Below, one piece after another: positions 11,216 to 62,012 of a stretch of DNA of 64,000 bases. Position 1 is the first letter of the stretch. Every line of letters starts with the position of its first letter. Location of the stretch: positions 124,001 to 188,000 of IMG/VR virus record IMGVR_UViG_3300007770_001284; one strand, written 5' to 3'. Position numbers and translations under genes: made by a program. The notes below the pieces were generated by a model that had not been told where the DNA came from, did no database searches, and saw only the letters and a list, made by a program, of their open reading frames with translations.

Positions 11216-11766
11216 TGAAAGTAATTTTGGGATTAGACGTTTCTACGTCTTGTATCGGATGGTGCTTGCTGCAAACTTCTGATGGGTCTCTGGTGGATGC
11301 AGGGTATATTCCATTAAAAGACCTAAGGTGCATGTTCAGCAAGGCACAGAGGGCGCATGAGACACTCATGACGCTGGTTGACAAGTACGGCATAGAAGCT
11401 ATAGCGATCGAGGAAAACCTACAAGCATTTAGACCCGGCTTTTCAAGTGCAAAGACCCTGATTACTCTTGCCAGATTTAATGGTATAGTAAGCTGGTTGT
11501 CGTATAAATGTACGAATCTACAACCAGACTTTATAAATGTGAATCACGCGCGAAAATCGGTAGGCTTAAAAATAGATAGAAAATCTTCGCTTTCTACGAA
11601 AGAGCAAGTATTTGAGTGGGCTCAGAAGAATATGGATGATTTTTCATGGCCCACCAAGACGCTTAAGTCTGGTCCAAGAAAGGGTCATGTAATCTTCGAT
11701 GACTGTTGTTATGATATATCTGATGCTTTTGTAATCGCAAGAGCATATGTGAATGATGAGCGATGA
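11212..11766 (+). CDS. ruvC: RuvC-like Holliday junction resolvase
   Basis: RNase-H-fold acidic motifs ILGLDVSTSCIGW, IAIEENL and DISDAFVIA. Confidence 0.85.
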   Translation: MMKVILGLDVSTSCIGWCLLQTSDGSLVDAGYIPLKDLRCMFSKAQRAHETLMTLVDKYGIEAIAIEENLQAFRPGFSSAKTLITLARFNGIVSWLSYKCTNLQPDFINVNHARKSVGLKIDRKSSLSTKEQVFEWAQKNMDDFSWPTKTLKSGPRKGHVIFDDCCYDISDAFVIARAYVNDER

Positions 11767-12727
11767 TTTAGATATTAAAAAGCGCGTTATGCTAGTTCAG
11801 CGAGCGTTTGGGTCTGTGCTTTTTGATAGAGACGGTGTGAATGTTGCAATTGGATGTGTCAACAAAGACTGTTCTTCTTTTGGAAAGCCAGCGAAAAAGA
11901 AACTAACGTTGCGAGTTGACAATGAGTTTTACCACTGTTGGGTTTGCGGCCTCCGGGGGAAAGGGTTAGCTTATTTCTTTCGAAAGTATAAGCCTAATTT
12001 TTCATCGCATGCCGCTGCCATATTTGAAAAGAAGATTGATGAAATCAAGGAAGAAATTCAGCTTATTCAACTTCCTGAGGAGTTTACGCTATTGGCTCAA
12101 CTAGGGAAGAACGCTGATCCAGATCTTCGAGCATGCAGAAGCTATCTTTACAATCGTGGATTGACACAAAAAGATTTATGGTATTTCAAGATTGGGGCTG
12201 TAACCGGCGGTCGATATCGTCGTAGGGTGATTATCCCATCTTTTGATGGTGAGGGGGTGCTGAATTATTACACTGCTAGAGCTATCGATGGTGAAGTGAA
12301 CAGGAAGTATCTAAATCCAAAAGTACGACGAGCTGACGTGATATTTAACGATATTAATATTGATTGGTCACAAGAGCTCACGTTAGTCGAAGGTCCATTT
12401 GACTTAATTAAATCGAATGAAAACACGACTTGCTTGTTGGGTAGCACGTTGAGTCCCCAACATGAATTATTCAAAAAGATAGTGAAAAACAAGACCCCAG
12501 TAATTCTTGCTCTTGATCCTGATGCGATTAAGAAGACACATGAAATTGCTGCAACTCTTGCTAGGTTTGATATTTGCGTAAAAATATTGAAGTTTGATAA
12601 TTTTTCTGATGTGGGTGAGATGCCGAGAGGACATCTCTCGCAGTTACTACCTCATGCAGAAGAATGGAGTGAGATGGCAAGACTGCGATCGCTTATTGGA
12701 ACGATTCGGTCAGGGTCTTTAATCTAG
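11753..12727 (+). CDS. DNA primase (Zn-binding domain + TOPRIM)
   Basis: CVNKDC...YHCWVCG zinc finger. TOPRIM motifs LVEGPFD, LALDPDA and DVGEM. RVIIPSFD...NYYTARAI. Confidence 0.85.
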   Translation: MMSDDLDIKKRVMLVQRAFGSVLFDRDGVNVAIGCVNKDCSSFGKPAKKKLTLRVDNEFYHCWVCGLRGKGLAYFFRKYKPNFSSHAAAIFEKKIDEIKEEIQLIQLPEEFTLLAQLGKNADPDLRACRSYLYNRGLTQKDLWYFKIGAVTGGRYRRRVIIPSFDGEGVLNYYTARAIDGEVNRKYLNPKVRRADVIFNDINIDWSQELTLVEGPFDLIKSNENTTCLLGSTLSPQHELFKKIVKNKTPVILALDPDAIKKTHEIAATLARFDICVKILKFDNFSDVGEMPRGHLSQLLPHAEEWSEMARLRSLIGTIRSGSLI

Positions 12728-50900: not shown

Positions 50901-51021
50901 GCAAGGGAAGTTTGAGACGAAACTTAAGTGCACACAGGTAGACGCATTTGGAAAATATATCAGCACGTTCCAATCTATCGAAAAAGCTCTTACTGCGATG
51001 ACAGAGACAGAAGAATCGTGA
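47986..51021 (+). CDS. baseplate hub-like protein (gp27/gpD-like fold) with large insertions
   Basis: C-terminal LSMTTLGCPVIEYGQHLFVDF...YVVSGIGHTISQGKFETKLKC is typical of hub/late-control-D folds; follows the LysM gene. Confidence 0.65.
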   Translation: MALVDDKLSFVVEALGRYFSIISKEEFISVLAFGGEEDLAEFGTTSFTDNDPLRKLVRLLMNTTEGGVIQYDIVKELGDMLSGDDAADQDIAASLYKFVGEPDSFETMGISGMPASSVSIKEMIGGSILNQVFASPQKSDPNLTATCVFPVRLTPAQRDTGAVALFMNAIPTLEFSRCIPYLDITLITPNKPVSDDGRIQTISLMQFLIGQAKLEEDSVNEYLQSATSMDAISDFVETQDAAMASGDEELLEEVAAGISTAGMELFTAPQTLVPMNETYDDFTVDPEATTDDEVDSGEKLPSYGGTRGAPIIDRTRPFMSINDFNITVTPSKGMMSHKTADLSLTLHDRSRLSEIAEFVKPDLYGRTELMITYGWSHPDDSAASADAGLSGNFFGSFLNALKISEKYGIVNSSFSFDEVGQVKIKLKLSMKGSSAVNTTNISKGEGVDDIMETIRDLTEAISVLRRQILGSSSGASEDVGGSTFLGAASDTSSALTIDEETSKAIAKFLGNNRNPEEGSATDEMVDNLTALFGSDGKSGVVADAKATIAGAVQNKLSIAKRLRGRGLDPFPRTFTGMGGSSTYVYIHGQNKRYISLGALLLYFVGKPLAATHRFDEVQFVFYAFNDKSSYLTGTNISEFPIKFEEFSKKFKEMTETTANIPLGRFISFLNKEFVHNQASAAYGLTKLYETDDEGNQKMKESISEDATALYNEKVKRLEDAYGESADQEFKMPRLTMHIEAVPMRTGIEDGQGRQGTILRIHLFDSQATKYSALGKMMLASRGNSLGMLSSAASQSAREPDPEEETAQADHEAEFIDLLSQALDAGLLEAVPELVGATVDGNGAITSVDPEEFARNYFRLKGGFRALKAFVSKSMPSIIYGSQNSAVISADLSSMNNSKLATVNMQRGGLGGGTTAQGARDAGLPLQTAPTSLSMTTLGCPVIEYGQHLFVDFGTGTSVDNVYVVSGIGHTISQGKFETKLKCTQVDAFGKYISTFQSIEKALTAMTETEES

Positions 51022-51027
51022 TAATTC

Positions 51028-51063: not shown

Positions 51064-52266
51064 ATGTCTATTTTTGTTTGTAAAGATGCTATAGGAACAG
51101 GACAGAGCTTATTACTTGAAGATGGCCAAGCATGTTGGGTCACCGATGAATATCCGGCAACATTCACTTATGGCTGTGGTGATAGAATCAATGCGTCTGA
51201 GCCTCTGTTCCAGCTTTTTGATATCACTTTACCAGAATTGATACCAGCAGAATTTATTCAAGCAATGCGAACATGCGGGATCGACAAGGGTGTTCCGTGG
51301 GCTCATATATTGCCAAAAAGGAAATTTATGGAGAGGTTTAAAAACTTCATCAATGCCCTTTCAGCCGCAGAAGAAAATATAGCGAATAATGAATATTCTA
51401 ATTTTTTTATTGAAACGAACAGAATTTTAAATAAACTATACTCATGTCAGCTCGACATGGACAAAGCTAAGCACGAACTGGAAATGACTACCTCTGCTGC
51501 TTTGACTAGCTTTTTGAAAGCTAGCAAAAACGCCATAATTGAACCGCCACAATATAGCAGAGTTTCTACTAAAACAGGACGTCTTACAATTAAAACTGGT
51601 CCGCAAATTTTAACTCTAAAAAAAGAATATCGTGAAGTTTTAAGAAGCAGGTTTGATGGTGGGTCTTTATTTGAAGTCGACTTTACATCACTAGAGCCAA
51701 GAGTCGCGTTTAATATCACTGCTGGGGAGAAGTTGCTACCGGGGGAAAAGAGTCCAACAGATCTATACCAATTCTTTATAGAGAAATCTAATATTCAAAT
51801 TCAGCGAGACACTGCGAAGCTAGCTGTGCTGTGTTCGCTTTACGGCGCAGGCACCTCTAAGTTGAGGTCAGTTTTGCAGAAAGACGGAAGCACATTTTCT
51901 GCTGACATGCTGGTCAAGAGGGTCGAGTCGTTTTTTGGCTTAAAAGAGATATTCAAAATGTTGAATGACCAAGCACAATCCGGGTATATTACCAATTTTT
52001 ATGGTCGACCTATCGAAGTCACCGACACTCGTCGCAATATTTTAGTCAATAATTTTCTACAATCAACAGCTGTTGACGTCGCTCTAGCGGGTTTTTGCCA
52101 GATTGTCGAAAATATTCCTTCGTGTAGGCCGGTCTTTATTATTCATGATGCCCTAATTATGGATGTGCCAAACGGACAGGAAGACAAGTTGCAAGACATA
52201 GTCGCTAAAGGATTTTCTGATGAGAAGATGGGTCACTTTCCCCTCAAGCTTACGAGGTTAAAATGA
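51064..52266 (+). CDS. polA: short family A DNA polymerase (polymerase domain only)
   Basis: TKTGRLT; motif A VDFTSLEPRV; motif B RDTAKLAVLCSLYG; NNFLQSTAVD; motif C FIIHDALIMDV. No exonuclease motifs. The ATG at 51064 is preferred over the TTG at 51028. Confidence 0.85.
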   Translation: MSIFVCKDAIGTGQSLLLEDGQACWVTDEYPATFTYGCGDRINASEPLFQLFDITLPELIPAEFIQAMRTCGIDKGVPWAHILPKRKFMERFKNFINALSAAEENIANNEYSNFFIETNRILNKLYSCQLDMDKAKHELEMTTSAALTSFLKASKNAIIEPPQYSRVSTKTGRLTIKTGPQILTLKKEYREVLRSRFDGGSLFEVDFTSLEPRVAFNITAGEKLLPGEKSPTDLYQFFIEKSNIQIQRDTAKLAVLCSLYGAGTSKLRSVLQKDGSTFSADMLVKRVESFFGLKEIFKMLNDQAQSGYITNFYGRPIEVTDTRRNILVNNFLQSTAVDVALAGFCQIVENIPSCRPVFIIHDALIMDVPNGQEDKLQDIVAKGFSDEKMGHFPLKLTRLK

Positions 52267-52745
52267 ACGAAGAAAAATTACGACAGCATATTCGTAAGAT
52301 TCTGTTAGAAGAAAGAGAATATACCAAGGGTGACGTTGTAGTTTCTGGAGCTCGAGGCCGGCCGAGTAAGCTTACAATGGAAGCCGGTGCATTGGCAGAA
52401 AGTGATCCAAAGAAATTGATGAAAAACCTTAAAGTCACCAGCTCAGAGCGTGGTAACTTCGACGGTTTGTCAGGCATTATAAAGCAAGCGATTTCAGGGA
52501 CAGAAGCAATGCAGCGCGCTTTCGGTGCCACCAAGTTAATTAAGTCAAAAAATGACTTAAAAGGTATTCAGGTTGCCCAAGGTGAATTGAAGCTTGGAAC
52601 AGCCGCGAAATTTTTGAATTATTCGCTTGTTGGGGCTGTGAAGTCTAGAATGATAGTCCCTGAAGAGGTAATCCAAATAAAGGTACTGTCTGGAATCGGA
52701 CTTGTGGTTTATTTATCGAAAACCAAGAGCTGGGAATCACGGTAA
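52263..52745 (+). CDS. hypothetical basic protein
   Basis: 160 aa; N-terminal KLRQHIRKILLEE helix. Confidence 0.65.
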   Translation: MNEEKLRQHIRKILLEEREYTKGDVVVSGARGRPSKLTMEAGALAESDPKKLMKNLKVTSSERGNFDGLSGIIKQAISGTEAMQRAFGATKLIKSKNDLKGIQVAQGELKLGTAAKFLNYSLVGAVKSRMIVPEEVIQIKVLSGIGLVVYLSKTKSWESR

Positions 52746-52798
52746 ATAACCCTGTACATTATTTCCTAAAATACTAATATTTTTAGTTAGGAAAAGTA

Positions 52799-53638
52799 AT
52801 GAAACACCTTGAGAACAGTGATAATTTAGTTGTATTAACCAGGTTAAAGGGCCTTGAACCACCAGATCGTGGTCCGATCAAGGGAGATGTCCCAGCAGTC
52901 GTTCTGGACGTAGAAACGACAGGCTTAAATTCGGATAAAAATGAAATAATCCAGATTGCTGTACGACCTTTTTTTGTGAACCCTGAAACAGGTGAAATAT
53001 CTGGCATTAAGAAATGTATTGAGTTTCTTCAGCAACCGAGTTTTCCTCTTCCCGAAGAAATTCGCGATATTACTGGTTTTTCTGATGAAGATCTTGCTGG
53101 TCATGAGATTGACTGGAAGAAAGTCTCAAAAATTCTGAATTCTTGCCAATTTATCATTGCGCATAACGCTAGCTTTGATCGTGAGTGGATAGATAAGAAC
53201 CTTAAGAGGAACGGCTATCAGCCTCCTCCAGATGCCATCTGGTGTTGCTCTCTGTCACAAGTCAATTGGAACAATGTCTGTCGACCGTCTAAGGCTCTGG
53301 AGGTCCTCTGCGCTTGGCATGGGTTTTTTTATGATTCCCATAATGCGATTGCCGACATCGACGCGACATTACACTTGTTAAGGTCTGCTGGGAGGATGCA
53401 AGAACTTCTTTCAGCCGCCGTTGAGTCTGATTATCATGTGTTTGCTGTGGGTTCTCAACGGGATGAAAATCCGCTGCTTAAAGCACGTCGATATCGCTGG
53501 AATCCTGACTTAGTATGTTGGTGGAAGTCTACACCATCCCAAAATGCCGCTGAAAATGAGTGCGAGTGGTTGCAGCAGAATCTAAAGAAAGTAGAACCAC
53601 AATTTTTTGAGGTAGAACCACAACTACGTTTTTCTTGA
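52799..53638 (+). CDS. DEDDh 3'-5' exonuclease (DNA Pol III epsilon-like)
   Basis: ExoI VLDVETTGL, ExoII IAHNASFD, ExoIII HNAIADIDAT. C-terminal KARRYRWNP...WWK domain. Confidence 0.9.
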   Translation: MKHLENSDNLVVLTRLKGLEPPDRGPIKGDVPAVVLDVETTGLNSDKNEIIQIAVRPFFVNPETGEISGIKKCIEFLQQPSFPLPEEIRDITGFSDEDLAGHEIDWKKVSKILNSCQFIIAHNASFDREWIDKNLKRNGYQPPPDAIWCCSLSQVNWNNVCRPSKALEVLCAWHGFFYDSHNAIADIDATLHLLRSAGRMQELLSAAVESDYHVFAVGSQRDENPLLKARRYRWNPDLVCWWKSTPSQNAAENECEWLQQNLKKVEPQFFEVEPQLRFS

Positions 53639-53652
53639 GATAATTAAGGTTA

Positions 53653-53946
53653 ATGGCTAATGAACAAAAAGAAAGACTGCGAACCCTGATTAGGTTTCTT
53701 CTAGAAGATGCTGAAATTCTTGGTGAGCCTGATTTCATTGATGGTCGAGATGACGACGACGATGAAGGACATCATGATGAAGCCTCTGCTGGAGGCGTTC
53801 CTGGTCCCGCAATGCCACTTGGTGTTGGACCATCATATCCAGCGACAGGTCGTCGTCGGAAGAAAAGAAAACCCGCGTGGAAAGCAAATGCTAGCGGTTT
53901 CGGTGGCGCAGCACCGTATACGAAGCCTAAAAAAAATAAGAATTAA
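53653..53946 (+). CDS. hypothetical protein
   Basis: 97 aa; RLRTLIRFLLED helix, acidic stretch, basic C-terminus. Confidence 0.6.
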   Translation: MANEQKERLRTLIRFLLEDAEILGEPDFIDGRDDDDDEGHHDEASAGGVPGPAMPLGVGPSYPATGRRRKKRKPAWKANASGFGGAAPYTKPKKNKN

Positions 53947-53948
53947 AT

Positions 53949-53977
53949 TTGAACATTAACAGTTTGTTTATTAAGTT
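53949..53977 (+). promoter_or_regulatory. sigma70-like promoter for the SSB gene
   Basis: TTGAAC-N17-TAAGTT. Confidence 0.45.
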
Positions 53978-54046
53978 TTACTTGTCCTTAGGGACACCCG
54001 TAGTGGGAATTTGAATATTGCATATTAAAAATTGGAGATTAAAAAA

Positions 54047-54841
54047 ATGGCAATTGATTTTGAAGCGCTTCGCAAGAAGCTAGGCCAGCTTTCTGGCAAT
54101 AATTCTCGTCGCAATACGATGTGGCGACCTCAAGAGGGAGAAGAAGCGATCGTTCGTATGTTGGCGTTTGACAACGAAGACGGTCTTCCCTTTTCTGAAC
54201 GATGGTTCTATTATAACATCGGAAATAATCCGGGTCTGTTGGCTCCCTATCAATTCGGAAACCCCGACCCGATTCAAGAGCTTATCACAACGTTGCGCGA
54301 TGAAGGTACGAAAGAGTCTTATGAGCTTTGCAAGAAGCTTTATCCCAAGCCTCGGTACTACGCTCCTGTGATTGTTCGAGGAGAAGAAGATCGTGGCGTT
54401 CGTCTGTGGGCATTTGGAAAGACTGTGTACCAGTCATTGCTAAATGTTATGCTCGATGAAGACTATGGCGATATTACGGACCCAGTAGACGGTCGTGATG
54501 TGAAGGTCGTTTGTACAAAGCAACCCGGTCGGCTTTATGCCACGACTGAAGTTCGTCCCCGTGGAAAGCAATCTAAGCTGGCTTCATCTGCAAAGCAGAT
54601 GAAGGAATGGACGGAAGCGCTCCCTAATCTTGATGAGCTTTACGAAGCAAAGTCTTATGATGCGCTTTCTAAGATTGTCAACGATTGGCTAAATGAGGGC
54701 GACACTGAAGCAGCCGAGTCGACAGGTACATCTCGCGGGTTTGACAATAATCAGAGCAAGAGCGGTTCAAGTGATCAGGTTGCATCGAAGTTTAAGAGTT
54801 TGGACGATGCGTTTGCTGATTTGGAAGAAGATGATTTTTGA
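54047..54841 (+). CDS. gp32: single-stranded DNA-binding protein (T4 gp32-like)
   Basis: MAIDFEALRKKL basic N-terminal helix; WRPQEG...VRML; KKLYPKPRYYAPVIVRGEE...VRLWAFGKTVY; DITDPVDGRDV; acidic tail FADLEEDDF. Confidence 0.88.
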   Translation: MAIDFEALRKKLGQLSGNNSRRNTMWRPQEGEEAIVRMLAFDNEDGLPFSERWFYYNIGNNPGLLAPYQFGNPDPIQELITTLRDEGTKESYELCKKLYPKPRYYAPVIVRGEEDRGVRLWAFGKTVYQSLLNVMLDEDYGDITDPVDGRDVKVVCTKQPGRLYATTEVRPRGKQSKLASSAKQMKEWTEALPNLDELYEAKSYDALSKIVNDWLNEGDTEAAESTGTSRGFDNNQSKSGSSDQVASKFKSLDDAFADLEEDDF

Positions 54842-54867
54842 TTTATAGGACGAAAGTACTATTTTTC

Positions 54868-54899
54868 ATGGGGACGAAGCAATTCGTCCCCATTTTTTT
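54868..54899 (+). terminator. rho-independent terminator after the SSB gene
   Basis: ATGGGGACGAA / GCAA / TTCGTCCCCAT followed by a T run. Confidence 0.88.
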
Positions 54900-54925
54900 G
54901 AAAAATTATTGGATTGATTTTATAA
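54898..54925 (+). promoter_or_regulatory. sigma70-like promoter for recA
   Basis: TTGAAA-N16-TATAAT. Confidence 0.5.
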
Positions 54926-54944
54926 TCTTTTCACGGGGATCTAA

Positions 54945-56135
54945 ATGGCAAGAAAGAAAAAAGAAGAAGTTGATTTCACCAGTGACTTGATTAAGTCTTT
55001 AAATAAGGAGCACGGCTCTCGTGTTGCATACAATTTATCACAAGATGAATCTCCTACACACGTGAAACGCTGGATCGGTACAGGTTCTAAACAATTAGAT
55101 TATATTATCTCTAATAGACCCAATGGTGGATTACCAGAGGGTCGAATTGTGGAAATATTTGGACCGCCCTCGATTGGCAAGTCTCATATTGCAATTCAGA
55201 TTGCTCGTTCCACCCAAGAGATGGGTGGAATTGTTGTTTATATCGACACAGAAAATGCTACTTCTGTAGAAAATCTCAGTCTTCTGGGTGTTGATATCAC
55301 TAAGCGTTTTGTGTATGTTGACACTCACTGTACTGAAGAAGTATTATCGATTGCAGAGGCTACAATTATGAAAGCAAAGGCGATGGATAAGGATGTTCCG
55401 ATTACGATCGTCTGGGATTCAGTCGCTGCTTCGTCACCAAAGGCTGAATTGGTAGGAGATTATGACCAAAACTCGATTGGCCTGCAGGCAAGAGCTATTT
55501 CTAAAGGGATGCGAAAAATTACAGGTGTAATCGGTAATCAAAATGTTTTGTTTGTTATTCTAAATCAGATTCGAACTAAGATCGGTGTGATGTATGGTGA
55601 TCCAACAGTTACGCCGGGAGGAAAAGCGATTCCATTTCATTCCTCCGTACGTATTAAGCTTGGTGCCGGCCAAAAGATTGAAAACAAGAATAAAGAAGTT
55701 GTCGGGATTCACGTTTCTGCAAAGACAATCAAGAATAAAGTCGCTGCTCCATTTCGTACTTGTAATTTCGAGATTCATTTTGGGAAAGGAATTCAAGAAC
55801 ATGAGCAAGTTTTTGATGAATTACGAAAATTCGGGGCAGGTATTGTAGACGGAAATGAAATTTGTATTAAGGGGACATCCGCTTGGAAAAACCTCACAGT
55901 CGCAGACGTTTCCACCGGGGAAATTTTGGTGGAAAAGAAGTTTTATAAAGCGGATTTCAATGATGTGTGGAAAGACCCGCAATATCGAAAGTATATTGAT
56001 GCTTTGCTTGAGCTTTGTATGATTCGAAAACTAGAAGACCCCAATGCTGCCGAGCTAGACACTGAATCGTATGAAGAGGTTCGCTCTGCCGTGATGGAGC
56101 TAAACCTTGAAGACATGCCAGATTTAGATGTATGA
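54945..56135 (+). CDS. recA: RecA/UvsX recombinase
   Basis: GGLPEGRIVEIFGPPSIGKS Walker A; VYIDTENA; VWDSVAA; LNQIRTKIGVMYGDPTVTPGGKAIPFHSSVRI; KNKVAAPF. Confidence 0.96.
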   Translation: MARKKKEEVDFTSDLIKSLNKEHGSRVAYNLSQDESPTHVKRWIGTGSKQLDYIISNRPNGGLPEGRIVEIFGPPSIGKSHIAIQIARSTQEMGGIVVYIDTENATSVENLSLLGVDITKRFVYVDTHCTEEVLSIAEATIMKAKAMDKDVPITIVWDSVAASSPKAELVGDYDQNSIGLQARAISKGMRKITGVIGNQNVLFVILNQIRTKIGVMYGDPTVTPGGKAIPFHSSVRIKLGAGQKIENKNKEVVGIHVSAKTIKNKVAAPFRTCNFEIHFGKGIQEHEQVFDELRKFGAGIVDGNEICIKGTSAWKNLTVADVSTGEILVEKKFYKADFNDVWKDPQYRKYIDALLELCMIRKLEDPNAAELDTESYEEVRSAVMELNLEDMPDLDV

Positions 56136-57078
56136 TAGACCTATACTAATAGTCGATGGGTTAAATTGTTTTTTTAGACACTTTGTAGCAAATCCTTCGC
56201 TAAGCGAAAACGGGGATCCAGTTGGGGGTATTGTGGGTTTTTTGAAAGGCCTGCAGCTTTTGCTTGAGAGGTATAACCCAACCCGTGTTATTGTTGTTTG
56301 GGAAGGCGGCGGCTCCCCCCGCCGCAGGGCGATCGATCCCAATTATAAAGCGGGCCGCCGTCCGGAAAAATTAAACAGGTTCTATTCTGAAGATATTCCA
56401 GACACTGTTTCAAATCGAAATGAGCAACTTTCAAAGCTTGTTAAAATCTTACGACATACTCCTGTTTCGCAATTTTACGTTTCCGATTGCGAAGCAGATG
56501 ATATAATCGCAAGGTTAGTGAATGTTAATTTTAAAAATGAAAAATGTGTAATCGTATCGACAGATAAAGACCTTTATCAATTGATCTCACCCAGAGTAAA
56601 ACAATGGTCCCCTGGTCAAAAAGCAGAGCTCGACCCACGTGTAATTTTAGAGAAATTTGGTATTCATCCTGAAAATTTTTGTGTTGCTCGTTGTTTTATT
56701 GGTGACGGCTCAGATGGGTTAAAAGGTGTACGTGGCGCTGGGTTTAAAGCCATGGCAAAGCGCTTTCCCGAGCTTAAATCTTCTTCATTTGTGAGTGTTG
56801 AAGTTATACTTAGCTTATGTCGAGAACGGCGGGAACAAAAGAGGTTAAAGCTTTATGATAATATCGTGTCTGATCAAGAAATTGTCAAAAAAAATTGGAA
56901 ACTCATGTACCTCGGAAGCGGAAACCTCTCCGGCACTCAAGTTCAAAAAATAGACGACATTATTTCGATGCAAGCTGGGAAAAGGGACAAATTGGGTTTC
57001 ATGCGTTGCTTAATTCAGCTGTGTATAAAAAATTTCGATACAGATAGACTTTTTATGACTTTTAAAGCATTAAATTAG
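56128..57078 (+). CDS. 5'-3' exonuclease / flap endonuclease (T4 RNase H-like)
   Basis: LIVDGLN; NYKAGR; CEADDIIA; VSTDKDLYQL; GDGSDGLKGVRGAGFK. Confidence 0.92.
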   Translation: MYDRPILIVDGLNCFFRHFVANPSLSENGDPVGGIVGFLKGLQLLLERYNPTRVIVVWEGGGSPRRRAIDPNYKAGRRPEKLNRFYSEDIPDTVSNRNEQLSKLVKILRHTPVSQFYVSDCEADDIIARLVNVNFKNEKCVIVSTDKDLYQLISPRVKQWSPGQKAELDPRVILEKFGIHPENFCVARCFIGDGSDGLKGVRGAGFKAMAKRFPELKSSSFVSVEVILSLCRERREQKRLKLYDNIVSDQEIVKKNWKLMYLGSGNLSGTQVQKIDDIISMQAGKRDKLGFMRCLIQLCIKNFDTDRLFMTFKALN

Positions 57079-57087
57079 GAAAAAATT

Positions 57088-58494
57088 ATGACATCACCAG
57101 CTTTTGCATTGCTTGACTCGGTCCAACCGGGTCAATTCTCCCAATACAACAAGAATTTTCAAGAGAAAATTTTGCAAGGGCTACTATCAGACAAACAATG
57201 GGCAGTACAGATGGTCGAGATTATGCGACCAGATTTTTTTGAGCTCAGGTACCTTGAGTACCTTTGTGAGAAGTACTTTGCGTATTTTTCAGAGTACAGA
57301 TGTTTTCCGACGCAGCTCCTTCTTATAAGCATTATCAAAGATGCGCTGAATGAGGAAGGTGATGTCTTGCTACGGGATCAAATTGTTTCTTACCTTGTGA
57401 GAATGAAGGAAAATCCCAACCCAAATGATCTTGCATATGTTAAAGAAAAGTCTCTTGACTTTTGTAAAAGGCAAGCGTTTAAAGAGGCTCTTGAAGAGTC
57501 GGTTAATTTGATTTCTACAGGTGAGTTCGAGAGCGTAATTACGCTAATGAAGAATGCGGTGTCAATTGGTCTTCCAAACACTGTAGGTCATGATTTTTTT
57601 GAAGATATGGAAGCTAGATTTCAAAAGATTAATCGATGTGTTTGCCCAACAGGGATTTATGAGCTAGACTCGAAAGATATATTGAACGGCGGCTTGGGAA
57701 GAGGAGAAATTGGCGTTGTTACTGCAAATACCGGTGTTGGAAAATCACATTGGCTAGTGGCAATGGGTGCGAACGCAATGCGATGCGGAAAAAATGTACT
57801 TCACTATACATTTGAATTGACAGAGCAAGCTGTTGGCCTGCGATACGACGCAAATCTTTGTAACATATCTGCTTCCAACGTGATAGATGAGAAAGAAGTT
57901 GTTCGAGACTTTTACGAGAAAAATGATGAGCTTGGTAGGTTGATTATAAAAGAATACCCAACTGGGTCAGCGTCGGTTGTTACGATTAAGAACCACATAG
58001 AGAAATTGTCACTTAGAAATTTTAAGCCAAGTGTAATAATCGTAGATTATGCCGACATTATGCGGTCTACACGATCATATGATTCTCTACGTCATGAATT
58101 AAAGCTAATTTACGAGGAGCTTAGAAACCTTGCAATGGAACTGAATATTCCAGTCTGGACAGCCTCACAAGCGAACAGGGATTCTGCGAATTCCGACATT
58201 GTTGGGCTAGAGAACATGTCAGAAGCATACGGGAAAGCTATGGTAGCCGACTTTGTTGTCTCACTCTCTAGAAAGGCAACAGAAAAAGCCTCCGGTTCAG
58301 GCCGTCTATTCATCGCAAAAAATAGGGCCGGAAAAGATGGGATCGTTTTTCCTATTCACATCGACACGGCTCTTTCTAAGATAGCTATATTGGATGAAGA
58401 TGTGTCAACACTCGCAGAAGCTGTTGAAAATGATGAAAAAGAAATAAAAAGCGCGCTTAGAGAAAAATGGAAGTCAATCACCAACATTGGGTAA
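57088..58494 (+). CDS. gp41: DnaB-like replicative helicase (T4 gp41-like)
   Basis: GEIGVVTANTGVGKS; YTFEL; LIIKEYPTG; IIVDYAD; VWTASQANR; IAKNRAG. Confidence 0.93.
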   Translation: MTSPAFALLDSVQPGQFSQYNKNFQEKILQGLLSDKQWAVQMVEIMRPDFFELRYLEYLCEKYFAYFSEYRCFPTQLLLISIIKDALNEEGDVLLRDQIVSYLVRMKENPNPNDLAYVKEKSLDFCKRQAFKEALEESVNLISTGEFESVITLMKNAVSIGLPNTVGHDFFEDMEARFQKINRCVCPTGIYELDSKDILNGGLGRGEIGVVTANTGVGKSHWLVAMGANAMRCGKNVLHYTFELTEQAVGLRYDANLCNISASNVIDEKEVVRDFYEKNDELGRLIIKEYPTGSASVVTIKNHIEKLSLRNFKPSVIIVDYADIMRSTRSYDSLRHELKLIYEELRNLAMELNIPVWTASQANRDSANSDIVGLENMSEAYGKAMVADFVVSLSRKATEKASGSGRLFIAKNRAGKDGIVFPIHIDTALSKIAILDEDVSTLAEAVENDEKEIKSALREKWKSITNIG

Positions 58495-58505
58495 AGGGTA
58501 ATACG

Positions 58506-61019
58506 ATGGCATGTGATTACGAAACTGCGATAAAAGAGTCACTAGAATTTTTTGAAGGTGATGAATTAGCTGCTAACGTTGTGGTCACTAAATACCTTCT
58601 AACGGATGCTGACGGAAATTATCTTGAATCATCCCCAGCCCAAATGCATGCTCGACTAGCGACGGAATTTCATAGAATCGAATCAAAATATGAAAACCCA
58701 TTGACATATGATGAAATTTACGAACTGCTGGATGGTTTTAGTCAGGTAGTCCCACAAGGTTCCCCAATGGCGGGAATCGGGAATGATTGTAAGCTACAGT
58801 CTATATCTAATTGTTTCGTTATTCCCGCTCCAGAAGACAGTTACGGCGGAATTCTCTCCACAGATCAGCGACTAGTCCAAATTGCTAAGCGTAGAGGAGG
58901 GGTTGGGTTTGATATAAGCACAATTCGCCCGAAGGGCCTATCTACTGCGAATGCTGCAAAAACCACTGATGGAATCGAGGTTTTTATGGATCGTTTTTCA
59001 AACTCATGCCGGGAAGTTGCTCAAGGCGGCCGTCGGGGTGCTTTAATGTTAACGATATCAGTCCATCATCCCCAGATTAGGGATTTTATAAAGATCAAGC
59101 AAGATTTAACTCGTGTGACCGGCGCAAATATTTCTGTAAGAATTTCTGACGAGTTTATGAGTGCCGTACGTGATAATTCAACTGTGCATTTACGTTGGCC
59201 TGTAGACTCTAAAAAGCCGGAAATTTCTGAGTATGTGAATGCTTCAGAATTGTGGCATGAGATTATTGAGAGTGCACATGCAACAGCTGAGCCGGGGTTA
59301 TTATTCTGGGACACTGCAAAAAAGATGACCCCAGCCGACATCTATAAAGATGAAGGGTTTAGTTCATCTTCGACGAACCCATGCGGCGAAATTATCTTGT
59401 CTCCGTATGACAGTTGTCGATTGATGCTTATTAATTTGACAAGCTTTGTACAAAACAAATGGCAAAAATCGTCAAAATTTGATTTTGAAGGTTTTGGAAA
59501 TGCTGTCCAAAAAGCGCAACGCTTGATGGACGATATGGTTGATTTGGAAATTGAGCAAGTTGAAAAAATTATTGCAAAAATTGATGGTGATCCAGAGTCT
59601 GCTGAAGTCAAGCAAATCGAAAAAAGCTTGTGGCAAAATATCAAGACAATGGCACAGCAGGGCCGACGAACCGGGCTTGGTATAACGGGCTTGGGAGATG
59701 TATTAGCGATGCTTGGTCATCGTTATGGAAGCAAGAAGAGTATTAAGGTTACAGAAGAGATTTATAAGGGCCTCGCCGTAAATTCATATTATTCGTCAGC
59801 TGTTTTGGCAAAAGAGCGAGGTGCTTTTCCCGTCCACGACCATGCTAAAGAAGATGGTCATCCATTTCTAGAGAGAATTTGGAAAGAAAAGCCTGAGATT
59901 AAGAAGTTGAATGAACAGTTCGGTCGTAGAAATATTTCCCTGACTACAACAGCACCGGCCGGATCAGTCTCAGTGTTAACACAAACGACATCTGGGATCG
60001 AGCCAGCTTACATGCTTCATTATACCCGTAGAAAAAAGATAACGGGCCAGGATGAGGATGCTCAAGTTGATTTTATTGATGATAGCGGTGACAAGTGGCA
60101 AGAATATGCAGTTTATCATCATGGCTTTAGGCAGTGGATGAATGCCACCAATGTCGATGGCGGTACAACTATGGACAATGAAAAGCTTGTTGCAATGAGC
60201 CCGTACGCCGGCTCAACAGCAGCAGAAATTGATTGGGTGGCGAAAGTAAAGATGCAGGCCGCCGCACAAAAATGGGTTTGCCACGCCATTTCAAATACTA
60301 CAAATTTACCTGCAGATGCAGATGTTGAAACAGTTAAGAACGTTTACATGACAGGATGGGAATCTGGATGTAAAGGAGTGACAGTTTATAGAGACGGTTG
60401 TCGAGCCGGCGTTCTTGTTGCTGCTGAGGAGGAGGACGTGTCCGCTCGTGATAGCGAGAGGATTATTACGCGGTCTGCCCCGAGACGTCCCATCTTACTT
60501 GAGTGTGATATCCATCAAGCCACTATTAAGGGTGAAGAATGGACAGTGATGGTGGGTCTCATGGAAGGTACGCCCTATGAGGTCATTGGCGGATTGTCTG
60601 AGTACATTGAAATTCCTCGTCGATATGAGCGCGGGAAAATAAGGAGACGCGCTCGGAAATCTATGCCATCGAAATATGACTTAATATTCGGCGAAAATGG
60701 TAACGAAATAGCTATAAAAGATATTGTGAAAGTCTTTGACAACCCCAACCACTCAGCGTTTACTAGAACCATTTCTCTTGCTCTACGCCACGGCGTTCCC
60801 ACCCAGTATCTGGTTGAACAATTATTGAAGGATAGAGACGCTGATCTTTTTTGCTTTTCAAAAGTTATTGCAAGATGCCTTAAAAAGTACATCGCAGACG
60901 GCACAAAAGTAAGCAATGGCGTCCTTGATTGTGAGTGTGAGGTTCCCGAATATAGCAACATTGTGTATCAGGAAGGGTGTGCAACTTGTCTTACCTGTGG
61001 CACCGCGAAGTGTGGATGA
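58506..61019 (+). CDS. nrdJ: class II (adenosylcobalamin-dependent) ribonucleotide reductase
   Basis: ISNCFV; RRGGGVG; QGGRRGA; TNPCGEI; TAPAGSVS; GCKGVTVYRDG (no class-I YY pair). C-terminal TSCPD-like/Zn-ribbon CATCLTCG. No nrdB nearby. Confidence 0.92.
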   Translation: MACDYETAIKESLEFFEGDELAANVVVTKYLLTDADGNYLESSPAQMHARLATEFHRIESKYENPLTYDEIYELLDGFSQVVPQGSPMAGIGNDCKLQSISNCFVIPAPEDSYGGILSTDQRLVQIAKRRGGVGFDISTIRPKGLSTANAAKTTDGIEVFMDRFSNSCREVAQGGRRGALMLTISVHHPQIRDFIKIKQDLTRVTGANISVRISDEFMSAVRDNSTVHLRWPVDSKKPEISEYVNASELWHEIIESAHATAEPGLLFWDTAKKMTPADIYKDEGFSSSSTNPCGEIILSPYDSCRLMLINLTSFVQNKWQKSSKFDFEGFGNAVQKAQRLMDDMVDLEIEQVEKIIAKIDGDPESAEVKQIEKSLWQNIKTMAQQGRRTGLGITGLGDVLAMLGHRYGSKKSIKVTEEIYKGLAVNSYYSSAVLAKERGAFPVHDHAKEDGHPFLERIWKEKPEIKKLNEQFGRRNISLTTTAPAGSVSVLTQTTSGIEPAYMLHYTRRKKITGQDEDAQVDFIDDSGDKWQEYAVYHHGFRQWMNATNVDGGTTMDNEKLVAMSPYAGSTAAEIDWVAKVKMQAAAQKWVCHAISNTTNLPADADVETVKNVYMTGWESGCKGVTVYRDGCRAGVLVAAEEEDVSARDSERIITRSAPRRPILLECDIHQATIKGEEWTVMVGLMEGTPYEVIGGLSEYIEIPRRYERGKIRRRARKSMPSKYDLIFGENGNEIAIKDIVKVFDNPNHSAFTRTISLALRHGVPTQYLVEQLLKDRDADLFCFSKVIARCLKKYIADGTKVSNGVLDCECEVPEYSNIVYQEGCATCLTCGTAKCG

Positions 61020-61031: not shown

Positions 61032-61418
61032 ATGGCGTATTCAGACAAAGTTATAGATCATTTTGACAACCCACGAAACATAGGTTCGCTGGACAAAGAT
61101 GCTTTCGATGTGGGTACAGGAATCGTCGGCGCCCCAGAATGTGGGGATGTAATGAAACTGCAATTAAAAATTAGTAATAACGGTGTTATTGAAGATGCAA
61201 AATTTAAAACATTTGGTTGCGGATCTGCAATAGCGTCTAGTAGTTTGGTTACAGAGTGGGTAAAGGGAAAGAGCATCGAGGATGCTAATAAAATTAAGAA
61301 TTCTGAAATAGCTCTAGAGCTTTGTTTACCACCAGTTAAAATTCACTGCTCTGTATTGGCTGAAGATGCCATTAAAGCTGCGATTAAAGACTATAGAGAC
61401 AAGTATGACAAGGAATGA
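61032..61418 (+). CDS. iscU: Fe-S cluster scaffold IscU
   Basis: MAYSDKVIDHFDNPRN; GAPECGDVM; FKTFGCGSAIASSS; LPPVKIHCSVLAEDA. Confidence 0.97.
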   Translation: MAYSDKVIDHFDNPRNIGSLDKDAFDVGTGIVGAPECGDVMKLQLKISNNGVIEDAKFKTFGCGSAIASSSLVTEWVKGKSIEDANKIKNSEIALELCLPPVKIHCSVLAEDAIKAAIKDYRDKYDKE

Positions 61419-61668
61419 AATAGAAGAGTTTATTGCCGCCGATATAAATCCAGCTCTTGAAATGCATGGTGGTTATCTTTCGATAGAGGGTTATAACGAA
61501 GATGATAAGATTCTTCATGTTGTAATGGGTGGTGGCTGTCAAGGGTGCGCATCTTCTAGCATAACGTTGAAATTACAAATAGAAGCTACACTTAAAGAAC
61601 AATTTCCAGAGCTAACTCAGGTCATAGATACAACAGATCACACTTCCGGTATAAATCCGTACTATTAG
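61405..61668 (+). CDS. Nfu/NifU-C-terminal Fe-S carrier domain protein
   Basis: INPALEMHGG...MGGGCQGCASSSITLK...IE...D.TDH..G.NPYY. The ATG at 61405 overlaps the end of iscU. Confidence 0.92.
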   Translation: MTRNEIEEFIAADINPALEMHGGYLSIEGYNEDDKILHVVMGGGCQGCASSSITLKLQIEATLKEQFPELTQVIDTTDHTSGINPYY

Positions 61669-61679
61669 GTTAACACAAC

Positions 61680-62012
61680 ATGGCAATTACGATGACAGAT
61701 TTTGCGATTGATCGAATTTCATCATTGATTGTAAGAAATCAAATGACGGTTGAAGAAGCTTATTTAAAGATCGGCCTCCGCGGGGGTGGTTGTTCTGGCT
61801 ATTCTTATTCATTTGATTTCGTTACAGAGCCTGACGAACATGATAAGGTGCTTGATTTCGATTCAGTGAAGATTTGCATTGACAAAAAGTCTTATCTGTT
61901 TTTGAACGGGACGGAAATTGATTACGAAGAAACACCGTTTAAGTCTGGAATAAAATTAAATAACCCGCTTGTAACCAGAACCTGTGGCTGCGGCGAATCG
62001 GTCGCGTTTTAG
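61680..62012 (+). CDS. iscA: A-type Fe-S carrier IscA/HesB
   Basis: GLRGGGCSGYSY; DKKSYLFLNGTEIDY; NP...TCGCGES. Confidence 0.95.
   Translation: MAITMTDFAIDRISSLIVRNQMTVEEAYLKIGLRGGGCSGYSYSFDFVTEPDEHDKVLDFDSVKICIDKKSYLFLNGTEIDYEETPFKSGIKLNNPLVTRTCGCGESVAF

What the first reader, a model, noticed from the sequence alone, without database searches (positions are those of the whole stretch)
51064..57078. Pol I in three pieces: thumb-truncated, Leu762 family-A polymerase plus stand-alone 3'-5' and 5'-3' exonucleases
Seen: the 400-aa PolA keeps motifs A, B and C but has no exonuclease domain. Only ~42 aa separate the QLD helix (51448) from TGRL (51574), where Klenow-type enzymes have roughly 110 aa of thumb. 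Motif B (RDTAKLAVLCSLYG) places Leu at the E. coli F762-equivalent (codon 51829-31), and motif C is HDA instead of HDE. A DEDDh exonuclease (52799) and a FEN-type 5'-3' exonuclease (56128) are separate genes nearby. Established: the thumb confers DNA grip and processivity; residue 762 affects nucleotide discrimination; T4-like replisomes normally use PolB. Inference: a minimal, low-processivity gap-filling polymerase working with trans-acting nucleases, or one that needs an unknown processivity partner (52263?). The main replicase is probably elsewhere.
Basis: partly seen in the sequence, partly recalled or inferred. Interest (0 to 1): 0.68.

Follow-up and report, generated by a model that had tools for sequence, protein, structure and literature searches.

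The report
Thumb-less accessory PolA in DnaE jumbo phage
A marine jumbo phage with a bacterial-type DnaE polymerase also carries a conserved 400-residue family-A polymerase with almost no thumb and a dead exonuclease stub, and it fits the recently described 'divPolA1' class rather than being a Pol I broken into three genes.

Summary
Window 51064-52266 encodes a 400-aa family-A polymerase. Motifs TGR, A and B are intact, Leu sits at the F762 site, and motif C is an invariant HDA. Only 39 residues lie where E. coli Pol I has 117 residues of thumb.

It is neither a fragment nor an artefact. An exhaustive profile search found 615 clusters at 50% identity (E<=1e-30), and the 150 best are all stand-alone proteins of 270-430 aa, mostly about 400. 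The N-terminal ~105 aa are a vestigial, acid-less remnant of the exonuclease domain, so "no exo domain" is only functionally true.

The record is a 254.7-kb phage with a T4-like head and a full DnaE (1266 aa) about 17 kb downstream of the mini-PolA gene. Ten of 14 related records also carry DnaE, and none carries PolB.

The gene order mini-PolA, SSB, RecA, FEN, DnaB, RNR is conserved in about 80 loci. It equals that of 'divPolA1' in Flavobacterium phage immuto (Yutin et al. 2024).

The DEDDh exonuclease is DnaQ-type, not Pol I-type, and occurs only in one subclade. The 160-aa neighbour has no clamp-like fold and carries a T4-style capsid-targeting-like N-terminus.

Best reading: a distributive gap-filling polymerase that works with the FEN beside a DnaE replicase. 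It is a new member of a known kind.

The parts
51064..52266 (+). Mini family-A DNA polymerase (400 aa, divPolA1-like). It has a vestigial exo remnant (aa 1 to ~105), helix G plus the QLD strand (aa 110-131), a two-helix thumb stub (aa 132-153), TGRL (aa 171-174), motif A (aa 206-213), motif B (aa 248-261) and motif C HDA (aa 361-363).
   Evidence: Pfam DNA_pol_A E 2e-13. Family alignment A1 and its invariant residues. AlphaFold model pLDDT 91.7. VIA-align Z 22-23 to Bst, Taq, Klenow and T7 large fragments. 615 clusters at E<=1e-30, best 150 of 270-430 aa.
51457..51522 (+). Thumb stub: two short helices (aa 132-141 and 145-153) replace helices H, H1, H2, the tip and most of helix I.
   Evidence: DSSP of the model. 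39 versus 117 residues between the palm strand and TGRL. Pfam profile positions 3-86 unmatched. Spacer of 34-43 aa in 95 members.
51829..51831 (+). Leu256 codon at the E. coli F762 (motif B position B3) site.
   Evidence: HMM and hhalign alignments to E. coli Pol I. L in 83 and I in 12 of 95 members.
52144..52152 (+). Motif C H361-D362-A363, with the E883 equivalent replaced by Ala.
   Evidence: Invariant in A1. Ala in 94 of 95 members. The immuto divPolA1 family also has D-A at this site.
52263..52745 (+). p160, a conserved small protein directly downstream whose start overlaps the polymerase stop. It has an N-terminal amphipathic helix ending in (L/I)xE, a variable linker that is Lys-rich in most homologues, and an alpha/beta domain (aa 31-155) of unknown fold.
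   Evidence: No Pfam, PHROG or NCBIfam hit. Homologue detected in the same position in about half of the 80 related loci. Model pLDDT 88. Best PDB match Z 6.2, within noise.
52799..53638 (+). DnaQ/PolC-type DEDDh 3'-5' exonuclease (279 aa) with a C-terminal extension. It is subclade-specific.
   Evidence: PF00929 E 7e-16, phrog_192 E 4e-34, NF006615 E 2e-60. Catalytic D37, E39, D127, H181 and D186 invariant. It is the only RNase_T match in the genome. It is absent from 3 DnaE-bearing relatives.
53653..53946 (+). p97, a small acidic-then-basic protein with the same N-terminal (L/I)xE-ending motif as p160.
54032..54841 (+). gp32-like single-strand DNA-binding protein with an acidic C-terminal tail.
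   Evidence: PF08804 E 4e-12, phrog_1192 E 1e-22. Sequence.
54945..56135 (+). RecA/UvsX-like recombinase.
   Evidence: PF00154 E 3e-63, phrog_97 E 2e-72.
56128..57078 (+). Stand-alone Pol I-type 5'-3' (flap) nuclease, linked to the mini-PolA in every related locus long enough to show it.
   Evidence: PF02739 E 2e-30; NF004397 E 1.7e-35 over Pol I positions 2-240. Synteny.
57088..58494 (+). DnaB-family replicative helicase.
   Evidence: PF03796 E 3e-20, phrog_19 E 1e-76.
58467..61019 (+). Ribonucleotide reductase large-subunit-type protein, which closes the conserved module.
   Evidence: PF02867 E 9e-90. Synteny.
50998..51025 (+). Promoter-like site just upstream of the polymerase gene (consensus match only).
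54868..54893 (+). Strong terminator-like hairpin after the SSB gene, followed by a promoter-like site at 54898-54926. Together they suggest that PolA, p160, exo, p97 and SSB form one transcription unit.
   Evidence: pattern scan only.
11753..12727 (+). DnaG-like primase candidate (weak match).
   Evidence: TIGR01391 E 3e-6 plus 0.0016. PF08275 E 6.5e-5, below its cut-off.

Best explanation
The gene encodes an accessory, non-proofreading, distributive family-A DNA polymerase. It is a member, or the closest sister, of the 'divPolA1' lineage of large phages. It is encoded in addition to the phage's main replicase, a bacterial-type DnaE. The palm and fingers are catalytically complete for templated dNTP addition. 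The thumb is reduced to a two-helix stub and the exonuclease domain to an inactive scaffold. The enzyme should therefore bind primer-template weakly and add few nucleotides per binding event. It heads a conserved module of SSB, RecA/UvsX, Pol I-type flap nuclease, DnaB and RNR. Its most likely job is the Pol I job done by two separate proteins: short-gap filling and limited strand displacement at primers, with the stand-alone FEN cutting the flaps. Gap filling at recombination intermediates made by the RecA-like protein is a likely second job. Shown here: sequence, fold, conservation, synteny and co-occurrence with DnaE. Inferred: activity, low processivity and the division of labour. The DnaQ-type exonuclease and the two small proteins between the polymerase and the SSB are later or unrelated insertions, not the other 'pieces' of a Pol I.
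For: Catalytic core: TGR, D705, E710 (steric gate), R754, K758, Y766, Q849, H881 and D882 equivalents are invariant in 95 unique members. Fold: Z 22-23 to Klenow-type large fragments over the whole chain. Thumb: 39 versus 117 residues, and 34-43 in all members. Exo remnant: no conserved carboxylate set. Real, selected gene: 520 word-search hits of 391-407 aa over 33-100% identity. The exhaustive search gave 615 clusters at E<=1e-30, the best 150 all 270-430 aa. Three independent IMG/VR contigs are 100% identical over the gene. Second polymerase: DnaE of 1266 aa in the same record, and in 10 of 14 related records including the 92%-complete 280.9-kb one. None has PolB and each has only one PolA match. 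In the four records without DnaE, the polymerase lies within 0.2-19 kb of the contig end towards which the gene runs, so the expected DnaE position about 20 kb downstream falls off the contig. Module: PolA, SSB, RecA, FEN, DnaB, RNR is conserved in about 80 loci. The order is the same in Flavobacterium phage immuto, whose first gene is the published divPolA1 (PMC11348598). Profile-profile comparison of the two families gives E 2.4e-5 over motifs A to C, and both carry D-A in motif C. The published description of divPolA1 matches: an extra PolA, truncated thumb, inactivated exo domain and conserved replication genes downstream.
Against: No biochemistry exists for any member. The invariant Ala at the E883 site may mean low catalytic rate; as far as I recall, E883A lowers kcat in Klenow, but this was not checked here. 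The family profile scores mycobacteriophage and E. coli PolA (45.8 and 28 bits) higher than the immuto divPolA1 (5 bits). Membership in divPolA1 therefore rests on synteny, shared architecture and a 75%-probability profile match. The published reference proteins CAB4155247 and QDP51333 were not available for comparison. No DNA ligase was found in this or seven related records, so the phage does not encode a complete Okazaki-maturation kit. Yutin et al. note that the replication-gene context is tighter around divPolA1 than around the 'regular' polymerase, which leaves room for a more central replicative role.
Confidence: 0.6

Rival explanations
1. The mini-PolA is the phage's true replicative polymerase, working with DnaB, SSB and primase, and DnaE has another or redundant role.
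For: It heads the conserved replication module, while DnaE sits about 17-20 kb away among metabolic genes such as glutamine-synthetase-like, ThyA, UDP-galactopyranose mutase and an epimerase. Yutin et al. make the same point about context. No phage clamp or clamp loader for DnaE was found.
Against: The thumb is missing and there is no proofreading, yet the genome is 250-300 kb. The trans exonuclease is absent from part of the clade. A regular polymerase is retained in every sufficiently complete relative, and in all published divPolA1 genomes.
Confidence: 0.12
2. A Pol I holoenzyme split into three cooperating genes. The polymerase binds the 279-aa DEDDh exonuclease as a trans proofreader and the FEN as its 5' nuclease.
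For: All three activities are encoded within 6 kb on one strand. phrog_192 is annotated 'DNA polymerase exonuclease subunit'. Split exo/pol PolAs exist in S-SBP1-like phages.
Against: The exonuclease is DnaQ/PolC-type, not Pol I-type. It is present only in one subclade. The polymerase still carries its own exo remnant where an exo domain would dock. No unsplit relatives were found.
Confidence: 0.1
3. The polymerase works with the 160-aa downstream protein as an obligate partner, either a processivity factor or, by analogy with CCPol-MP of SCCmec elements, a factor that allows primer-independent initiation.
For: A p160 homologue is found directly downstream of the polymerase in about half of the related loci, down to ~30% polymerase identity, often with overlapping stop and start codons. 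CCPol-MP is a precedent for an exo-truncated PolA with a small partner.
Against: The p160 fold is not a beta-barrel, clamp, OB fold or thioredoxin; the best match is Z 6.2, within noise. Its conserved N-terminal helix ending in (L/I)xE is shared with p97 and three unrelated small ORFs. In a phage with T4-type gp20, gp21 and gp23, that points to a capsid-targeted internal protein. The immuto phage has no p160 homologue. A DnaG-like primase candidate exists.
Confidence: 0.08

Closest known systems
divPolA1 (Yutin et al. [quoted passage not shown]
   Same: It is an extra divergent PolA beside a regular polymerase of family A, B or C. The thumb is truncated and the exo domain is dead. It heads the same module of SSB, RecA, 5'-3' exonuclease, DnaB and RNR. 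Both have D-A instead of D-E in motif C.
   Different: Sequence similarity is very weak: hhalign E 2.4e-5, and the A1 profile scores the immuto protein at only 5 bits. The immuto protein has 441 aa, Phe at position 762 and His at the E710 site. The immuto phage pairs it with a regular PolA, whereas here the partner is DnaE. There is no p160 homologue in immuto.
Klenow-type Pol I large fragment (E. coli, Bst, KlenTaq)
   Same: The overall fold matches (Z 22-23), and the palm and fingers motifs and the steric-gate Glu are shared.
   Different: About 78 thumb residues are missing. The exo domain is cut to about 105 aa with no catalytic acids. E883 is replaced by Ala and F762 by Leu or Ile. The 5' nuclease is a separate gene four genes away.
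Split exo/pol T7-like PolA of S-SBP1-type cyanophages (Czernecki et al. 2023, PMC10201439)
   Same: The polymerase and an exonuclease are encoded as separate neighbouring genes.
   Different: There, a recent frameshift split a normal T7-type exo from its pol, and unsplit relatives exist. Here the exonuclease is of another family (DnaQ-type), is subclade-specific, and no unsplit relatives exist.
'Broken-thumb' Leu-B3 PolA supercluster (SPO2-like, KPP25-like, APEX, CHEAP; PMC10201439)
   Same: It shares Leu at position B3 (762), an altered thumb and an auxiliary role beside another polymerase. The best NCBIfam model is the actinobacterial 'bifunctional exo/pol' NF011538, E 2e-10.
   Different: Those enzymes are about 550-650 aa with full-length, though bent, thumb helices and a full-size exo domain. 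Relatedness was not tested by a tree here.
CCPol-MP of staphylococcal SCCmec elements
   Same: An exo-truncated family-A polymerase followed by a small conserved gene.
   Different: The p160 model is an alpha/beta domain, not the five-stranded barrel predicted for MP. The phage has a DnaG-like primase candidate. No sequence or fold link was found.

Membership tests
Family A DNA polymerase (PF00476) | Klenow-like palm, fingers and thumb fold | tested here: met
   Pfam E 2e-13, above the cut-off. Foldseek E about 1e-12 and VIA-align Z 22-23 to Bst, Taq, Klenow and T7. The thumb is present only as a stub.
Family A DNA polymerase (PF00476) | Motifs TGR, A (D..E), B (R...K...[FYL]...YG) and C (HD[E]) | tested here: met
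   All are invariant in 95 members except the third residue of motif C, which is Ala.
divPolA1 (Yutin et al. 2024) | Encoded in addition to a regular DNA polymerase in a large phage genome | tested here: met
   DnaE in the same record and in 10 of 14 relatives.
divPolA1 (Yutin et al. 2024) | Truncated thumb, and an exo domain present but with its catalytic acids replaced | tested here: met
divPolA1 (Yutin et al. 2024) | Conserved replication genes downstream (SSB, RecA, 5'-3' exo, DnaB, RNR) | tested here: met
   Same order in the window, in 80 IMG/VR loci and in MW353176.
divPolA1 (Yutin et al. 2024) | Sequence grouping with the published members (CAB4155247, QDP51333, immuto gene 1) | tested here: inconclusive
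   Against the immuto family, hhalign gives probability 75% and E 2.4e-5, but the HMM score is only 5 bits. The other two reference records are not in the collections.
Bacterial Pol I split into three genes | 3'-5' exonuclease piece homologous to the Pol I exo domain (PF01612) | tested here: not met
   The protein belongs to PF00929 and NF006615 (DnaQ/PolC type). PF01612 scores 16.7 bits, below its cut-off of 23.6.
Bacterial Pol I split into three genes | 5' nuclease piece homologous to the Pol I N-terminal domain | tested here: met
   NF004397 E 1.7e-35 over positions 2-240; PF02739 E 2e-30.
Bacterial Pol I split into three genes | Close unsplit relatives or other trace of gene fission | tested here: not met
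   The best 150 of 615 strong clusters are all 270-430 aa. The three genes are not contiguous.
Pol III epsilon (DnaQ) proofreading subunit, for the 279-aa exonuclease | DEDDh catalytic motifs | tested here: met
   D37, E39, D127, H181 and D186 are invariant in 14 homologues.
Pol III epsilon (DnaQ) proofreading subunit, for the 279-aa exonuclease | Obligate co-occurrence with, and binding to, a DnaE alpha subunit | tested here: not met
   Three relatives with DnaE (G004, G005, G010) have no RNase_T-family gene in the available record. Binding was not tested.
CCPol-MP primase-polymerase | Small beta-barrel partner that replaces the missing part of the exo domain | tested here: not met
   The p160 model is an alpha/beta domain with no significant match. 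Interaction with the polymerase was not tested.

The most novel reading that the evidence does not exclude
Thumb-less mini-PolAs could be the dedicated second polymerase of a hybrid two-polymerase phage replisome. In that reading, DnaE borrows the host clamp for bulk synthesis, and the mini-PolA is recruited, for example by the acidic tail of the gp32-like SSB or by DnaB, for lagging-strand primer processing and recombination-primed starts. It would then gain DNA grip from a partner rather than from its own thumb. That would be a new solution to polymerase processivity and a widespread one, given 615 clusters at 50% identity.
Probability: 0.12. Interest if true: 0.7.

Novelty: new member of a known kind. 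Interest (0 to 1): 0.38.

Why it matters
The family is among the smallest natural family-A polymerases that keep every nucleotide-selection residue, and it is very common in marine viromes. If active, it shows how far the thumb and exo scaffold can be cut back. It would also be a natural test case for the roles of the thumb, of E883 and of position 762. It documents a phage lineage with a T4-type head but a bacterial-style polymerase set: a DnaE replicase plus a 'Pol I function' spread over separate genes. For annotation, these genes should not be called truncated or split Pol I. The neighbouring DnaQ-type exonuclease should not be assumed to be the polymerase's proofreader.

Tried and rejected
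1. Complex prediction of the polymerase with the 279-aa exonuclease gave ipSAE 0.00 in both runs. The tool's verdict was 'no answer', so this counts neither for nor against binding.

2. p160 function. There was no Pfam, PHROG or NCBIfam hit and no usable ESM Atlas hit. Foldseek found nothing at E<=0.001, and an all-PDB VIA-align gave a best Z of 6.2, within the tool's stated noise.

3. Direct comparison with the published divPolA1 proteins was not possible. Accessions MK892584, LR796625, MK892766, LR796859 and MK892784 are not in the phage collection. The paper's held supplement has no sequences. Cluster look-ups gave no GenBank accessions.

4. tblastn of the polymerase and of the RecA-like protein against 50,697 phage records found no close relative of this phage. 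The best polymerase hit was a mycobacteriophage PolA at 24% identity.

5. A permissive hhalign (mact 0.05) of the N-terminal half against single E. coli or Gilberta sequences gave conflicting, low-confidence registers upstream of TGRL. I did not use it. I relied instead on the Pfam register, the model's secondary structure and the [I/L]-D strand signature.

No read-level or expression check was made, and read laying was not used.

7. Searches for a phage sliding clamp (PF00712, PF02768, PF09116), clamp loader (PF13177), ligase (PF01653, PF01068), Toprim_2 and Prim-Pol were all negative. The records are incomplete (28-92%), so this is weak evidence of absence.

Full report
**What is there**

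The window is bases 124001-188000 of a 254,743-bp IMG/VR virus record (linear, about 75% complete). Nearly all genes lie on the + strand.

The virion genes are T4-like:
- large terminase
- gp20 portal, PF07230 E 3e-73
- gp21 prohead protease, PF03420 E 1.6e-24
- gp23 major capsid protein, PF07068 E 1e-77

After two large unannotated proteins, the region of the finding reads as follows:
- 51064-52266: PolA-like, 400 aa
- 52263-52745: p160, no family
- 52799-53638: RNase_T/DnaQ-type exonuclease, 279 aa
- 53653-53946: p97
- 54032-54841: gp32-like SSB
- 54945-56135: RecA/UvsX
- 56128-57078: Pol I-type 5'-3' nuclease
- 57088-58494: DnaB helicase
- 58467-61019: RNR

**Check of the observation**

- Pfam aligns residues 138-388 to DNA_pol_A profile positions 87-361. 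E. coli Pol I fills the profile from position 3 at residue 551.
- Between the palm strand (QLD, 129-131) and TGRL (171-174) lie 39 residues. E. coli has 117 between D548 and T666.
- The AlphaFold model (pLDDT 91.7, pTM 0.89) shows only two short helices there, 132-141 and 145-153.
- In 95 unique relatives this spacer is 34-43 residues.
- The equivalents of R668, D705, E710, R754, K758, Y766, Q849, H881 and D882 are invariant.
- Position 762 is Leu in 83 members and Ile in 12. Position 883 is Ala in 94 of 95.

One point needs correction. The protein is not simply a bare polymerase domain. VIA-align superposes residues 1-400 on whole large fragments, starting at Klenow 350, Bst 314, Taq 303 and T7 residue 1 (Z 22-23, 350-387 residues aligned). 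Residues 1 to about 105 are therefore a shrunken exonuclease-domain remnant. It has a single conserved acidic position and no DEDD set, so it is a scaffold and not an enzyme.

**Not an artefact or pseudogene**

- The word-indexed search gave 520 relatives, the best 120 nearly all 391-407 aa, over 33-100% identity. They sit on contigs of up to 308 kb.
- The exhaustive, length-blind profile search of 1.84 billion representatives gave 5,993 hits at E<=0.001, 1,298 at E<=1e-10 and 615 at E<=1e-30. The best 150 are all 270-430 aa and match the profile end to end.
- No longer fusion or unsplit Pol I-like relative appears among them.
- Three independent IMG/VR contigs are 100% identical over the gene.

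**Genome context: the main replicase**

The same record encodes a complete DnaE at G000:C1:193403-197203, which is 1266 aa with PHP, Pol3-alpha, fingers and HhH domains (TIGR00594 E 5e-176). It has no PolB and no second PolA.

Fourteen larger related IMG/VR records were searched:
- Ten carry a DnaE of 1209-1232 aa, about 20-30 kb downstream of the mini-PolA. One of them is the 92%-complete 280.9-kb record.
- None has PolB.
- Each has exactly one PolA match, the mini one.
- In the four without DnaE, the polymerase lies 0.2-19 kb from the contig end towards which the gene runs. The expected DnaE position therefore falls off the contig.

DnaE in marine jumbo phages is known; it marks group PGC_A of Weinheimer and Aylward 2022. 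No phage clamp, clamp loader or ligase was detected, in records that are incomplete. A weak DnaG-like primase candidate lies at window 11753-12727.

**Synteny**

In 80 IMG/VR loci plus two ENA contigs, the order is large structural protein, mini-PolA, SSB, RecA, FEN, DnaB, RNR. It is invariant down to 29% polymerase identity.

A p160 homologue follows the polymerase in about half of the 80 loci, down to about 30% polymerase identity.

The 279-aa exonuclease is found only in the subclade with at least about 36% polymerase identity. Three related records that have both DnaE and the mini-PolA (G004, G005, G010) have no RNase_T-family gene at all.

**The two nucleases**

The 3'-5' exonuclease has all DEDDh residues. 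However, it belongs to the DnaQ/PolC-exo family:
- NF006615, E 2e-60
- PolC and epsilon models, E 1e-15 to 1e-8
- PDB best hits are PolC and DnaQ exonuclease domains

The Pol I exo family PF01612 scores below its cut-off. This exonuclease is therefore not a detached piece of Pol I. It is not obligatorily tied to either polymerase, and which polymerase it serves, if either, is open.

The FEN is a true homologue of the Pol I 5' nuclease domain, and it is always in the module.

**The proposed partner p160**

- It folds confidently (pLDDT 88) into an N-terminal helix plus an alpha/beta domain.
- It has no significant structural neighbour. The best is Z 6.2, below the tool's noise level, and nothing resembles a clamp, OB fold or thioredoxin.
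- Its N-terminus carries a motif of the form [FL][IL]R..[IV]R..[IL].xE. The motif is conserved in all p160 and p97 homologues, and it is shared with three otherwise unrelated small ORFs of the genome.
- The motif ends in (L/I)xE. From my own knowledge, not a tool result, that is the cleavage motif of the T4 gp21 prohead protease and the end of the capsid-targeting sequence of T4 internal proteins.
- This phage has gp20, gp21 and gp23 homologues. I therefore read p160 and p97 as probable capsid-targeted internal proteins, at about 50% confidence, rather than as polymerase partners.

**Comparison with what is known**

Yutin et al. 2024 (PMC11348598) described 'divPolA1' as follows:
- It is a divergent PolA encoded in addition to a regular polymerase of family A, B or C.
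- It occurs in 14 phages of 155-190 kb, namely Flavobacterium phage immuto, GOV bins and uncultured Caudovirales.
- The thumb is truncated and the exo domain is inactivated.
- A conserved set of replication genes lies downstream.

The immuto record shows this order: divPolA1 (441 aa), two small hypothetical proteins, SSB, RecA, 5'-3' exonuclease, DnaB, RNR. That is the same order as in the window. It also has a regular PolA elsewhere in the genome.

Profile-profile comparison of my family with an immuto-type alignment gives E 2.4e-5 (probability 75%) across motifs A to C. Both share D-A in motif C and a similar C-terminal G.[FY]P[LV]K.

By plain HMM score, however, the family is nearer to mycobacteriophage PolA (45.8 bits) and E. 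coli Pol I (28 bits) than to the immuto protein (5 bits). The other published reference proteins could not be fetched. I therefore file the gene as a member or sister of divPolA1 on architecture and synteny, with sequence membership left inconclusive.

Leu at position 762 is the commonest state in aquatic viral PolA (Nasko et al. 2018). It also marks several subfamilies, including the 'broken-thumb' supercluster (Czernecki et al. 2023). It is not a special feature here. Split exo/pol genes (S-SBP1) and the CCPol-MP pair are known precedents, but they differ in the ways listed under Closest known systems.

**Mechanism**

Shown:
- an intact nucleotidyl-transfer and dNTP-selection core
- almost no thumb
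- a dead exo scaffold
- strict linkage to SSB, RecA, FEN and DnaB
- co-occurrence with DnaE

Inferred:
- the enzyme is active but distributive
- it does the short-patch synthesis that Pol I does in bacteria, with the flap nuclease as a separate protein
- it probably also fills gaps at recombination intermediates
- DnaE, probably using the host clamp, does bulk synthesis

The invariant E883-to-Ala change and the missing thumb argue against a fast, processive replicase.

Pattern scans suggest one transcription unit running from a promoter-like site at 50998-51025 to a strong terminator-like hairpin at 54868-54893. This is unverified.

**Verdict**

The 'three pieces of Pol I' framing and the guess about a partner at 52263 are not supported. 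The kind of enzyme was described computationally in 2024. What is added here:
- the size and uniformity of the family
- the invariant motif-C Ala
- the constant pairing with DnaE in this clade
- the non-Pol-I nature and patchy distribution of the exonuclease

Interest is moderate, because no member has been studied biochemically.

Noticed in passing
window 52263-52320 and 53653-53715; also G000:C1 27321-27617, 236865-237368, 237365-238009: Five otherwise unrelated small proteins begin with the same amphipathic motif, [FL][IL]R..[IV]R..[IL].xE, which ends in (L/I)xE. It is conserved in all p160 and p97 homologues of related phages. In a phage with T4-type gp20, gp21 and gp23, it looks like a capsid-targeting and prohead-protease cleavage signal of internal (injected) proteins.
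   Followed up: partly
G000:C1:193403-197203 (outside the window, about 5.4 kb past its end): Full-length DnaE-type Pol III alpha (1266 aa) with a PHP domain. It is embedded among metabolic genes: glutamine-synthetase-like, a DnaJ-domain protein, ThyA, UDP-galactopyranose mutase, an NAD-dependent epimerase and a DHH/DHHA1 phosphoesterase. No phage clamp or clamp loader was found.
   Followed up: partly
window 12735-15878: A 1047-aa fusion of an Mre11-like phosphoesterase with a Rad50/SbcC-like ATPase in one ORF. It lies next to a weak DnaG-like primase candidate at 11753-12727.
   Followed up: no
window 61032-62012: Three consecutive Fe-S cluster assembly genes (NifU_N/IscU-like, NifU C-terminal-like, IscA/HesB-like) lie right after the RNR gene. 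A ClpP-family protease, a 4HBT thioesterase and a peptidoglycan amidase follow. The Fe-S genes are also present in the relative L007.
   Followed up: no
window 54800-54841: The gp32-like SSB ends in an acidic tail with a terminal aromatic residue. It is reminiscent of the partner-recruiting C-terminal tip of bacterial SSB and could be a docking site for the thumb-less polymerase or the FEN.
   Followed up: no
L069 11709-14289; L088 7620-10333; L091 12284-14997: In three related loci the RecA-like gene is detected as two pieces 0.9-1.5 kb apart. This suggests an inserted element, such as an intron, intein or homing endonuclease, in recA.
   Followed up: no
window 54868-54926: An 11-bp-stem terminator-like hairpin with a T-run is followed immediately by a near-consensus sigma-70-like promoter (TTGAAA, 17 nt, TATAAT) between the SSB and RecA genes.
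   Followed up: no
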